A stretch of DNA of 64,000 bases, taken from positions 434,001 through 498,000 of the forward strand of contig CATNEN010000005.1 of the NCBI GenBank assembly GCA_950097015.1, in the 5' to 3' direction. Numbering within the stretch: the stretch's first letter is position 1; every line of letters starts with the position of its first letter. The notes beneath the pieces were generated by a model. The model worked only from the letters and a program-made list of their open reading frames with translations, was not told the origin of the DNA and did not search any database. Below are positions 42,489 to 44,489 of the stretch, piece after piece. Origin of the DNA: Macrostomum hystrix. Its lineage: Eukaryota > Animalia > Platyhelminthes. Made by a program: the position numbers and the translations under genes.

Positions 42489-42899
42489 ATGGCCCGCACC
42501 AAGCAGACAGCCAGGAAGTCCACTGGAGGCAAAGCTCCCAGGAAGCAGCTAGCAACCAAGGCTGCTCGCAAGTCAGCCCCCAGCACCGGCGGAGTCAAGA
42601 AGCCGCATCGCTATCGTCCTGGTACCGTGGCTCTTCGCGAGATTCGCCGCTACCAGAAGAGCACAGAGCTGCTGATTCGAAAGCTGCCATTCCAGCGTCT
42701 GGTCCGCGAGATCGCCCAGGACTTCAAGACCGACCTGCGCTTCCAATCGGCCGCCGTTGGCGCCCTACAGGAGGCCAGCGAGGCCTACCTGGTTGGCCTG
42801 TTCGAGGACACCAACCTGTGCGCTATTCACGCCAAACGCGTCACCATCATGCCCAAGGACATCCAGCTGGCTAGGCGCATTCGCGGCGAACGCGCTTGA
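42489..42899 (+). CDS. H3.3: Histone H3.3-type (S31, A87/G90), probably polyadenylated
   Basis: 136-codon H3 with KSAPSTGG and [11 protein letters not shown]; upstream acceptor CTCTTCTCTTAG; AATAAA at ~43094; no histone stem-loop. Confidence 0.95.
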
Positions 42900-44078
42900 A
42901 AGCTGTTGGACAAGCTTCTGTAAAAAAGCGCATTATCAGTGACGCAACTAACTATCAGTTAATCCACCCTGCTTTTGTCATCAACTTCTCTGTTGTTTTC
43001 CTTAGTATAAAAGCTACTGTCCTAAAATGTCTTACAACCGAAATATCTATTAAGCTATTTGTGTGTTTTGTAAATTTTTATTCAGTTTGTGAAATAAACT
43101 TAAACTTGTCCTTTTGTCTTAACTATCTCTCTGGACTTTCTCTCTGTTTAATTTGACCCTTTAATCGAAAACTGTTTTCTTCACTTATGCACTGTCATTT
43201 AAAATTCCTAAAAAAGTCAATTTAATATATCAATACGTATTCATCAATTTCTATCGTTCTACAAAGGCTCGAAAACATTTACTCTGAAATATATTGTCTC
43301 TTAAATTCAGGTATAAACTTAATTTTGTTTATTTGTCACATTCTAGATTAGCCTAGCAGGTCATTGTGTGTGCGGGCATATCGTTGCTTGTCAAAGGCAG
43401 CAGCTCTCTTTTGCTCTGATAGCAATGTAATTTCTTAAGCAAATATGGTGAATAAATTTTCAATAAAATGTTTTTTTAAACGATAAATACACCTCATAGT
43501 TAACATTTAATAAGTTTATTAATCGATGTGTTTCACATTAAATAAAAAATTCTTAGTTCGCTTTTTTATTTAAAAAAATACCAATTGCATACTACTAAGA
43601 CTAGTCGTAGATCAGTAGTGTCTACTGAAACTTAGAAATTGTTTAGCTGTACATAAAAAGTTTCATGATCAAGAGCAGTATTTTGTTGTCATTGACAACC
43701 ATTTTGCAGATTTCGCGAGTGGATTTTTAGTGCTGCATAAACTTTGAATTCATCATCAACAATATCGTCAAGGCCTTGACTTTTTAGTTTTATGTTCTAC
43801 TTTAAAGTTTTGTTGCTATTTTAGGAAACAGGGCAGCATTCACTGCTGACAGCTCCACTACTTATTTGGGTAGTCTGTATCGTTTATTTGTCATATTTAG
43901 CAAAAGAAAAACAAAAAATATTTCACAAGCTTATGTAATATAGAACCGGTTTAAAACTGGTTTTAGAAGTTAATTAGTGTAAAGAGAAAATATTACAAGG
44001 CAGACAACACAGATTATTTGGGAAATGAATATATTCCAGTTTTTCTCAGTGTTTCCGGGTCACTAAAAATTCGTTTTA

Positions 44079-44489
44079 TCAAGCGCGCTCTCCTCGGATG
44101 CGCCTAGCCAGTTGCATATCTTTAGGCATGATGGTGACGCGTTTGGCGTGAATAGCGCACAGGTTGGTGTCCTCGAACAGGCCAACCAGGTAGGCCTCGC
44201 TGGCCTCCTGTAGGGCGCCAACGGCGGCCGATTGGAAGCGCAGGTCGGTCTTGAAGTCCTGGGCGATCTCGCGGACCAGACGCTGGAATGGCAGCTTTCG
44301 AATCAGCTGCTCGGTGCTCTTCTGGTAGCGGCGAATCTCGCGAAGAGCCACGGTACCAGGACGATAGCGATGCGGCTTCTTGACTCCGCCGGTGCTGGGG
44401 GCTGACTTGCGAGCAGCCTTGGTTGCTAGCTGCTTCCTGGGAGCTTTGGCTCCGGTGGACTTCCTGGCTGTCTGCTTGGTGCGGGCCAT
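44079..44489 (-). CDS. Divergent histone H3.3 variant (G13A, L60Q, I124M)
   Basis: Intact H3 ORF with ATG at 44489, convergent with the 42489 copy; CCAAT boxes at ~44665 and ~44715 and a TATA-like element upstream on the minus strand. Confidence 0.92.

What the first reader, a model, noticed from the sequence alone, without database searches (positions are those of the whole stretch)
42489..44489. H3.3 variant (A13, Q60, M124) whose diagnostic residues appear shielded from gene conversion by its inverted neighbour
Seen, from a manual alignment of the two 411-bp CDSs: codons 14-57 and 61-120 are identical. The only four differences in codons 1-120 form two pairs, each a synonymous change two codons from an amino-acid change (T11 act/acc with G13A; T58 aca/acc with L60Q). 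Codons 121-133 hold nine differences, eight of them synonymous. Inference: the duplicate is old (heavily diverged 3' end, unrelated UTRs) and repeatedly homogenised by conversion between the inverted copies, with tracts covering residues 13 and 60 selected against. That implies a functional, probably undescribed H3.3 variant. Established: G13 lies between the K9/S10/T11 and K14 modification sites, and residue 60 is just downstream of K56 at the end of the alphaN helix region.
Basis: partly seen in the sequence, partly recalled or inferred. Interest (0 to 1): 0.75.

Follow-up and report, generated by a model that had tools for sequence, protein, structure and literature searches.

The report
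Flatworm H3.3 gene pair, partly homogenised
Two tail-to-tail histone H3.3 genes of a Macrostomum flatworm are old duplicates whose first 365 coding bases were recently copied over by gene conversion; one copy keeps three amino-acid changes at near-invariant positions, and whether selection protects them is plausible but unproven.

Summary
Two intronless 411-bp H3.3 genes, A at 42489-42899 (+) and B at 44079-44489 (-), differ at 13 bases. Two pairs of differences lie 5 nt apart (nt 36/41 and 177/182). Nine more lie in nt 366-402. B alone carries G13A, L60Q and I124M.

The contig is not human. Its canonical H3 protein is identical to Macrostomum lignano entries.

Gene conversion over an old duplicate is well supported:
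- Homology stops at the CDS ends.
- A permutation test for conversion tracts gives P about 0.01.
- The H3.3 gene on contig C3 groups with A in the 3' end, while A groups with B in the 5' 365 nt.
- B's 3' end is unique in the genome and at saturation-level synonymous divergence (8 synonymous changes, 1 not).

The claim that selection shields the variant residues is only partly supported.
- For: the paired differences are non-random (P about 0.002), no third donor exists, and A-versus-C3 differences cluster around the same two spots (post hoc P about 5e-5).
- Against: one genome only, no expression or orthologue data, and the exact B protein is absent from a 15-billion-protein collection. M124 may be spared simply because it lies near the end of homology.

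The scan has already noted conversion between inverted gene pairs elsewhere in this genome. This is a neat new example of known processes, of moderate interest.

The parts
42489..42899 (+). Copy A: intronless H3.3 CDS (136 aa, S31, AAVG at 87-90). Its protein is identical to three other H3.3 genes of this genome.
44079..44489 (-). Copy B: intronless H3.3-type CDS (136 aa) carrying G13A, L60Q and I124M. It is unique in the genome.
42489..42853 (+). Homogenised tract in A (CDS nt 1-365), with 4 differences from B.
44125..44489 (-). Homogenised tract in B (CDS nt 1-365). B is probably the recipient, because A also resembles the C3 gene over its whole length.
44449..44454 (-). Island 1 in B (CDS nt 36-41, CGGAGC): synonymous T11 ACC plus A13. 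The 16-mer around it is unique in the genome.
44308..44313 (-). Island 2 in B (CDS nt 177-182, CGAGCA): synonymous T58 ACC plus Q60. The 16-mer around it is unique in the genome. Site 177 has three states (A in A, C in B, T in C3, C in the six other genes).
44079..44124 (-). Anciently diverged 3' end of B (CDS nt 366-411) with 9 differences from A, 8 of them synonymous. It includes the M124 codon at 44115-44117. GC3 is 0.47, against 0.67-0.93 in the other eight H3 genes. No other copy exists in the genome.
42900..44078 (.). Single-copy spacer holding both unrelated 3' UTRs. AATAAA lies at 43093-43098 (+, for A) and 43883-43888 (-, for B). There is no histone stem-loop.
44585..44719 (-). Promoter-like region of B: a TATA-like cataaatta (44593 to 44585) and two CCAAT boxes (44669 to 44664, 44719 to 44714), about 100-230 nt upstream of the ATG. 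These are sequence motifs only.
42328..42376 (+). End of a highly repeated element (GC hairpin followed by CTAG, Helitron-like) that closes 2.8 kb of satellite arrays only 112 nt upstream of A's ATG.

Best explanation
A and B are an old, convergent pair of replication-independent H3.3 genes in a Macrostomum flatworm. Non-allelic gene conversion between the inverted coding sequences, with A most probably the donor and B the recipient, has recently overwritten CDS nt 1-365 of B. The last 46 nt escaped, probably because they are too close to the end of homology. That much is shown. The next part is inferred. The two 6-nt patches that still differ are remnants of B's older sequence. They persist because converted versions that lose A13 or Q60 in B, or that give them to A, are removed by selection. 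This is the 'peak of divergence at a selected site under conversion' pattern. B would then be a working H3.3 sub-variant. G13A sits next to K14, where glycine governs the enzymes that add and remove K14 acetylation. L60Q puts a polar residue between the alphaN and alpha1 helices and may loosen the nucleosome, as a Leu-to-Gln change does in mouse H3mm15.
For: Conversion: homology is confined to the CDS. A Sawyer-type permutation test gives a global P of about 0.01 for A-B. The segments disagree: A=B but not C3 at 13 sites in nt 1-365, while A=C3 but not B at 8 consecutive sites in nt 366-402 (run test P 0.0018). Old origin: B's 3' end differs at 9 of 15 third positions from A and at 63% from the six other genes. 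It has no donor in the genome. Its ratio of 8 synonymous to 1 non-synonymous change shows long purifying selection (P 1e-4 against neutrality). Islands: the two tight pairs have P 0.002. B-specific 16-mers are unique in the genome, so there is no third donor. Site 177 needs one mutation fewer if B's C is ancestral. Eight of 14 A-C3 differences lie within 10 nt of nt 41 or 182 (post hoc P 5e-5). These include the A/B-shared states found in no other H3 gene, at nt 45, 189 and 192. Synonymous variability among the other six genes is only slightly raised there (0.46 against 0.38). The theory is reviewed in PMC3924837. G13 and L60 are invariant in 137 and 151 H3 motif instances among the best hits. 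G13R swaps change NuA3 and CoREST activity on K14 (PMC12789522, PMC7316510). H3mm15 is a functional three-substitution H3.3 sub-variant whose L100Q destabilises the nucleosome (PMC13744785). B has an intact ORF, CCAAT and TATA-like motifs and an AATAAA.
Against: The evidence comes from one genome and four informative sites. The C3 clustering statistic was found after looking. The exact B protein is not in the 15-billion-protein collection, which does hold M. lignano proteins. No H3 with A13 or Q60 was seen among the 120 best cluster representatives. The Q60 motif is absent from 241 million metagenome records. There is therefore no sign of conservation. These searches are weak for close relatives, however, because 90% clustering hides them. 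Four other genes encode canonical H3.3, so B could be redundant. Homogenising nt 1-35 separately from nt 36-41 with no upstream homology is mechanistically awkward. It is less awkward given that the distant paralogue C7 is also identical to A over nt 1-24.
Confidence: 0.45

Rival explanations
1. The conversion history is the same, but the four 5' differences are new mutations that arose in B after the last conversion. B is a redundant fifth H3.3 gene under relaxed constraint, either slowly decaying or carrying mildly deleterious strain-specific alleles. The clustering would reflect multi-nucleotide or repair-associated mutation, since synthesis during gene conversion is error-prone, rather than selection.
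For: B has the derived state at nt 36, 41 and 182. Two non-synonymous changes out of four fits neutrality (P 0.95) and not normal H3 constraint (P 0.005). B's ratio of 3 non-synonymous to 10 synonymous changes differs from 0 to 84 among the four canonical H3.3 genes (Fisher P 0.002). G13 and L60 are otherwise invariant, as expected if the changes are harmful. No identical protein is found elsewhere. Four other loci supply canonical H3.3.
Against: Two independent double hits with the same 5-nt spacing are improbable (P about 0.002). This reading does not explain why A-C3 differences and the A/B-specific states gather at the same two spots. Site 177 costs an extra mutation. B's 3' end shows that the gene was held under strong purifying selection for a long time. 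The ORF and the promoter-like motifs are intact.
Confidence: 0.35
2. The islands are unselected leftovers of patchy mismatch repair in one heteroduplex. Old B was a more divergent H3 variant that is being erased by conversion, and the two patches and the 3' end are simply what has not been overwritten yet.
For: B's 3' end is more diverged than any other paralogue pair in that segment and has an unusual GC3 of 0.47. This fits a formerly distinct lineage. Discontinuous conversion tracts are a known outcome of heteroduplex repair (general knowledge).
Against: With the 3'-end ratio of 1 non-synonymous to 8 synonymous differences, the chance that both two-site patches contain a non-synonymous difference is about 0.04 (my arithmetic counts). 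The patches are centred on the only amino-acid differences in 365 nt.
Confidence: 0.15
3. Assembly or polishing artefact: the B-specific bases are errors, or the two copies are a chimeric collapse.
For: None directly. Reads could not be examined.
Against: The two copies have unique, unrelated flanks and a single-copy spacer. The B-specific bases occur nowhere else in the genome, so they cannot come from mis-mapped paralogue reads. The differences are substitutions that keep the frame, and 10 of 13 are synonymous.
Confidence: 0.03

Closest known systems
Peak of divergence at a selected site in duplicated genes under gene conversion (Innan 2003; Teshima and Innan 2008; human red/green opsin exon 5; reviewed in PMC3924837; Tigriopus GOT1, PMC3728101)
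   Same: The duplicates are otherwise homogenised and keep their differences only around amino-acid changes. Linked synonymous differences survive next to those changes.
   Different: Here the islands are only about 6 nt wide, lie in a 411-bp histone gene and are seen in a single genome. Neither selection nor a functional difference has been shown.
H3.3 sub-variants with a few substitutions (mouse H3mm7 and H3mm15, PDB 5xm1 and 9mb2; human H3.5 and H3.6)
   Same: The protein is H3.3-type (S31, chaperone-recognition motif) with three substitutions, one of them a Leu-to-Gln change. The gene is intronless and separate from the main H3.3 genes.
   Different: The substitutions are at other positions (13, 60, 124 against 100, 112, 128). 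No expression, incorporation or stability data exist. The gene arose by old DNA duplication followed by conversion, and has no recognisable retrocopy features.
Interlocus gene conversion of duplicated histone genes (yeast, PMC4700949)
   Same: Paralogous histone genes are more alike than their age predicts, and the homology is limited to coding sequence.
   Different: In yeast the conversion is argued to keep the proteins identical. Here one partner retains amino-acid differences.
Mosaic conversion between inverted gene pairs elsewhere in this genome
   Same: The genome, the inverted arrangement, the CDS-limited or patchy identity and the old flanks are the same.
   Different: Those are long genes with kb-scale escaped blocks. 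Here the escaped patches are of codon size and coincide with amino-acid changes in one of the most conserved proteins known.

Membership tests
Core histone H3 (Pfam PF00125) | Histone-fold domain match above the Pfam gathering score | tested here: met
   B scores 159.2 bits and A 164.7 bits, against a cut-off of 26.4.
H3.3 (replication-independent H3) | S31 and the A87/I89/G90 chaperone-recognition patch | tested here: met
   S31 is present. The patch reads AAVG, so V89 replaces I89 while A87 and G90 are kept. Fasciola hepatica H3 has the same patch. The best PDB matches are H3.3 chains.
H3.3 (replication-independent H3) | No 3' histone stem-loop; polyadenylated mRNA | tested here: met
   Searches find no RF00032 in the window. 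One search finds RF00032 after all four canonical H3 genes and after none of the five S31-type genes. AATAAA lies about 190 nt after each stop codon. Polyadenylation itself was not observed.
H3.3 (replication-independent H3) | Expression outside S phase and HIRA/DAXX-dependent deposition | not testable with these tools
   No expression or biochemical data are available.
Non-allelic (interlocus) gene conversion | Identical runs longer than chance, given the variable sites | tested here: met
   the A-B concordant run covers 36 of 93 variable sites (or 54 of 133), with global P about 0.01.
Non-allelic (interlocus) gene conversion | Different segments support different relationships among paralogues | tested here: met
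   the site pattern along the gene is [26 protein letters not shown]. The run of 8 Q sites has P 0.0018.
Non-allelic (interlocus) gene conversion | Paralogues within a species more alike than orthologues between species | not testable with these tools
Selection-maintained divergence island (neofunctionalisation under conversion) | Divergence peaks centred on amino-acid differences | tested here: met
   each amino-acid difference has a synonymous difference 3-5 nt to its 5' side. The pairing has P 0.002.
Selection-maintained divergence island (neofunctionalisation under conversion) | The differing residues are conserved in orthologues or fixed in the population | not testable with these tools
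   The only data are negative and weak: exact B is absent from the collection, and no A13 or Q60 H3 was seen.
Selection-maintained divergence island (neofunctionalisation under conversion) | The variant copy is expressed and functionally distinct | not testable with these tools
   Only promoter-like motifs and an intact ORF were seen.

The most novel reading that the evidence does not exclude
B is an expressed H3.3 sub-variant specific to the Macrostomum lineage. Its residues A13 and Q60 have been held for a long time against continual conversion from its neighbour, leaving codon-sized islands of old sequence. That would be single-codon-resolution evidence of selection on a histone tail residue next to K14 and on a residue between the alphaN and alpha1 helices. 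It would imply altered K14 acetylation turnover and a less stable nucleosome, perhaps in the germ line.
Probability: 0.35. Interest if true: 0.6.

Novelty: new member of a known kind. Interest (0 to 1): 0.4.

Why it matters
H3 is among the most conserved proteins known, and natural substitutions at G13 and L60 are very rare. If B is expressed, it offers a natural experiment on two points. One is the role of glycine 13 in the writing and erasing of K14 acetylation. The other is the contribution of the alphaN-alpha1 linker to nucleosome stability. The gene pair would also be an unusually sharp illustration of selection opposing gene conversion. If B is merely decaying, the locus is an ordinary conversion mosaic, like many others in this genome.

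Tried and rejected
1. The look-up of encoding contigs for B was meant to give other assemblies and RNA-seq contigs.
2. An exact look-up of B in the 15-billion-protein collection found nothing. This is weak, because gene callers may have used the in-frame upstream TTG, which gives a 161-aa ORF.
3. The search for homologous proteins with B was dominated by fused or mis-annotated H3 proteins. Clustering at 90% hides any B-like relative inside the big H3.3 cluster. None of the 120 representatives has A13 or Q60, and one (Sycon ciliatum) has M124.
4. Two metagenome pattern scans, one for A13 plus Q60 and one for the Q60 motif, gave 0 hits.
5. A third donor for the islands or for B's 3' end was rejected. 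The B-specific 16-mers and the 3' end are unique in the genome.
6. A syntenic paralogous locus on C3 was rejected. Only the CDS matches, so there is no remnant partner to compare.
7. A histone stem-loop or any Rfam RNA in the spacer was not found. Only sub-threshold noise appeared.
8. I looked by eye for a quasi-palindrome or template-switch origin of the paired changes. No convincing template was seen, and this was not tested formally.
9. Literature on Macrostomum H3.3 yielded one unrelated paper.
10. No spliced model was needed, because both genes are intronless. No joined-exon step was taken.

Full report
ORGANISM AND LOCUS. The window is G000:C5:434001-498000 of a 220-Mb, 42-contig assembly. 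Earlier notes of the scan call it a Macrostomum flatworm. I checked this independently. The canonical H3 protein of this genome (L006) is identical to Macrostomum lignano entries PAA53446.1 and UniRef A0A267FH04. The contig is therefore not human, and the operators' restriction on human DNA does not apply. The surroundings are rich in repeats. A Ty3/gypsy-type element lies at about 15.3-22.5 kb. Satellite arrays of 23-mers and 18-mers span 39501-42283. They end in a roughly 50-nt hairpin-plus-CTAG terminus that has at least 609 candidate copies in the genome, only 112 nt upstream of copy A.

OBSERVATION. Two intronless 136-codon H3 ORFs lie tail to tail. A is at 42489-42899 (+) and B at 44079-44489 (-), with 1179 nt between them.
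- nt 36 (synonymous, T11) and nt 41 (G13A);
- nt 177 (synonymous, T58) and nt 182 (L60Q);
- nine differences in nt 366-402, eight of them synonymous, with nt 375 giving I124M.

The inverted-repeat arms are 414 nt long, which is the CDS plus 3 nt, so the UTRs and flanks are unrelated. Two clustering statistics show the pattern is not random. Two pairs no more than 5 nt apart have P about 0.002. Nine of 13 differences in the last 46 nt have P about 1e-6.

WHAT THE GENES ARE. Both match Pfam Histone strongly, and their best solved-structure matches are H3.3 chains. The genome holds nine full-length H3 genes and one CENP-A-like gene. They fall into two groups:
- Four genes encode a canonical H3 (A31, M66, SAVQ). 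Each is followed by an Rfam histone stem-loop.
- Five genes (A, B, and genes on contigs C3, C7 and C12) encode the S31/AAVG type. They have no stem-loop.

A and B each have an AATAAA about 190 nt after the stop codon. The AAVG patch (V89) is also found in Fasciola hepatica H3. A, C3, C7 and C12 encode the same protein, and only B differs. B has CCAAT and TATA-like motifs 100-230 nt upstream. These are motifs only and do not show expression.

CONVERSION. The nucleotide distances are A-B 13, A-C3 17 and B-C3 28. All other pairs differ at 47-84 sites, which approaches saturation for synonymous sites. Even so, A, B and C3 share no flanking homology. Their similarity is therefore not that of young whole-locus duplicates.

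A Sawyer-type permutation test singles out A-B, with a global P of about 0.01. A three-way site-pattern analysis shows a mosaic. In nt 1-365, A equals B and differs from C3 at 13 sites. In nt 366-402, A equals C3 and differs from B at eight consecutive informative sites, with a run-test P of 0.0018.

B's 3' end has no counterpart anywhere in the genome. It differs from A at 9 of 15 third positions and from the six remaining genes at 63% of third positions. Its GC3 is 0.47, against 0.67-0.93 in the other eight H3 genes. Eight synonymous changes to one non-synonymous change is incompatible with neutral drift (P about 1e-4). B, or at least its 3' end, therefore descends from an old H3.3 lineage that was long under selection, and its first 365 nt were overwritten by A-type sequence. 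A is the likelier donor, because A resembles C3 along its whole length. Whether there were many events or only one or a few cannot be told.

ARE THE VARIANT RESIDUES SHIELDED? The following observations favour shielding.
1. The paired pattern is non-random.
2. The B-specific 16-mers over both pairs are unique in the genome. They were therefore not imported from a third copy.
3. Site 177 has three states: A in copy A, C in B, T in C3, and C in all six other genes. This is one mutation cheaper if B's C is an unconverted ancestral base.
4. A new observation: 8 of the 14 A-C3 differences in nt 1-365 lie within 10 nt of nt 41 or nt 182. The binomial P is about 5e-5, but the test is post hoc. Three of the four states shared by A and B and found in no other H3 gene (nt 45, 189, 192) sit just 3' of B's amino-acid changes. 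The B-only synonymous base sits 5 nt to the 5' side in both cases.
5. Synonymous variability among the other six genes is only slightly higher in these neighbourhoods (0.46 against 0.38). A general mutational hot spot is therefore not an adequate explanation.

This is what the theory of selection against conversion predicts: old sequence persists next to a selected site and leaks to the partner only up to that site (PMC3924837; PMC3728101). If the patches were unselected leftovers, both would contain an amino-acid difference only about 4% of the time. That figure uses the 1:8 ratio seen in the 3' end.

Several points count against shielding or leave it open.
- There are only four sites and one genome, and the strongest statistic was found after looking.
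- B shows an excess of non-synonymous change relative to its four canonical sisters: 3 non-synonymous to 10 synonymous, against 0 to 84 (Fisher P 0.002). This fits relaxed constraint as well as specialisation.
- Two non-synonymous changes out of four in the converted tract is what neutrality predicts.
- G13 and L60 are invariant in 137 and 151 H3 motif instances among the best hits, and I124 is nearly so. That is equally typical of harmful changes.
- The exact B protein is absent from a 15-billion-protein collection that contains M. lignano proteins.
- None of the 120 best cluster representatives has A13 or Q60.
- 241 million metagenome records contain neither the A13-plus-Q60 combination nor the Q60 motif.
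- These absence results are weak for close relatives, because clustering at 90% hides them and gene callers may choose a different start.
- For M124, shielding need not be invoked. It lies 36 nt from the end of homology, where tracts are unlikely to reach.
- Converting nt 1-35 while sparing nt 36-41, with no homology upstream, is awkward. However, the distant paralogue C7 is also identical to A over nt 1-24, so part of that identity may be constraint rather than conversion.

LIKELY FUNCTION IF B IS EXPRESSED (inference). G13 precedes K14. G13R swaps reduce K14 acetylation by NuA3 (PMC12789522). They also relieve the CoREST complex's poor deacetylation of K14ac (PMC7316510). Those experiments used arginine, not alanine, so the size of any G13A effect is unknown.

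L60Q places a polar side chain in the short hydrophobic stretch between the alphaN and alpha1 helices. That placement is from my own knowledge of the nucleosome structure and was not tested here. In mouse H3mm15, a functional, testis-expressed H3.3 sub-variant with three substitutions, L100Q is the main cause of a less stable and more dynamic nucleosome (PMC13744785). I124M is conservative and also occurs in a Sycon H3.3-like protein.

COMPARISON AND NOVELTY. Conversion between inverted paralogues is well known. The scan has already noted it in at least 17 places in this genome, and those notes were not re-tested here. H3.3 sub-variants with a few substitutions are known in mammals. I found no paper on Macrostomum H3.3. 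I classify the locus as a new member of known kinds. It is an unusually fine-grained conversion mosaic that may mark a lineage-specific H3.3 sub-variant.

VERDICT. Conversion over an old duplicate is well supported, at about 0.9. Selection-shielded, functional variant residues are plausible, at about 0.45. Relaxed constraint is the main rival, at about 0.35. Interest is 0.4.

No reads, RNA-seq or related flatworm genomes could be examined.

Noticed in passing
window 42328-42376 (and 39501-42283): A roughly 50-nt terminus with a GC hairpin (gctcccc-gaa-ggggggc) ends in CTAG followed by T, which looks like a Helitron-type 3' end. It has at least 609 candidate copies in the genome. It closes 2.8 kb of 23-mer and 18-mer satellite arrays only 112 nt upstream of copy A's ATG. 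The same terminus lies upstream of a canonical H3 gene on C39 (L008).
   Followed up: partly
L001 (G000:C3:13777709-13778116) versus window 42489-42899: The H3.3 gene on contig C3 is 96% identical to A over the CDS only, with 17 differences and unrelated flanks. This implies ectopic conversion between distant loci as well as within the inverted pair.
   Followed up: partly
L003 (G000:C12:191442-191849), CDS nt 366-399: A, C3 and the otherwise distant C12 gene (61 differences from A) are identical over nt 366-399 (pairwise permutation P <0.001 in the five-gene set, 0.027 in the nine-gene set). Either a further small conversion tract or shared constraint at the 3' end could explain this.
   Followed up: no
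L006-L009 (contigs C34, C37, C39): Only four canonical, stem-loop-bearing H3 genes were found. They differ from one another at 47-53 of 411 nt, so there is little concerted evolution among the replication-dependent copies. They share an upstream motif, taataaattatg.taatga, followed by a tatata box.
   Followed up: partly
window 45606-46136: A 16-mer tandem array (45703-46058) and its flanks are 82% identical to a stretch about 4 kb from the C3 H3.3 gene, but in a non-syntenic orientation. It is probably a dispersed repeat.
   Followed up: no
window 15342-22475: A Ty3/gypsy-type retroelement with a gag zinc-knuckle ORF and an uninterrupted 1644-aa pol ORF (protease, RT, RNase H, integrase). It was described only.
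   Followed up: no
window 52859-53584 (-): An ORF with a septin C-terminal domain match (Pfam PF00735, E 5e-18). It is probably an exon of a host septin gene.
   Followed up: no
L010 (G000:C34:5296982-5297263): A divergent H3-like ORF, 40% identical over residues 45-128, which is a candidate CENP-A-type centromeric H3.
   Followed up: no
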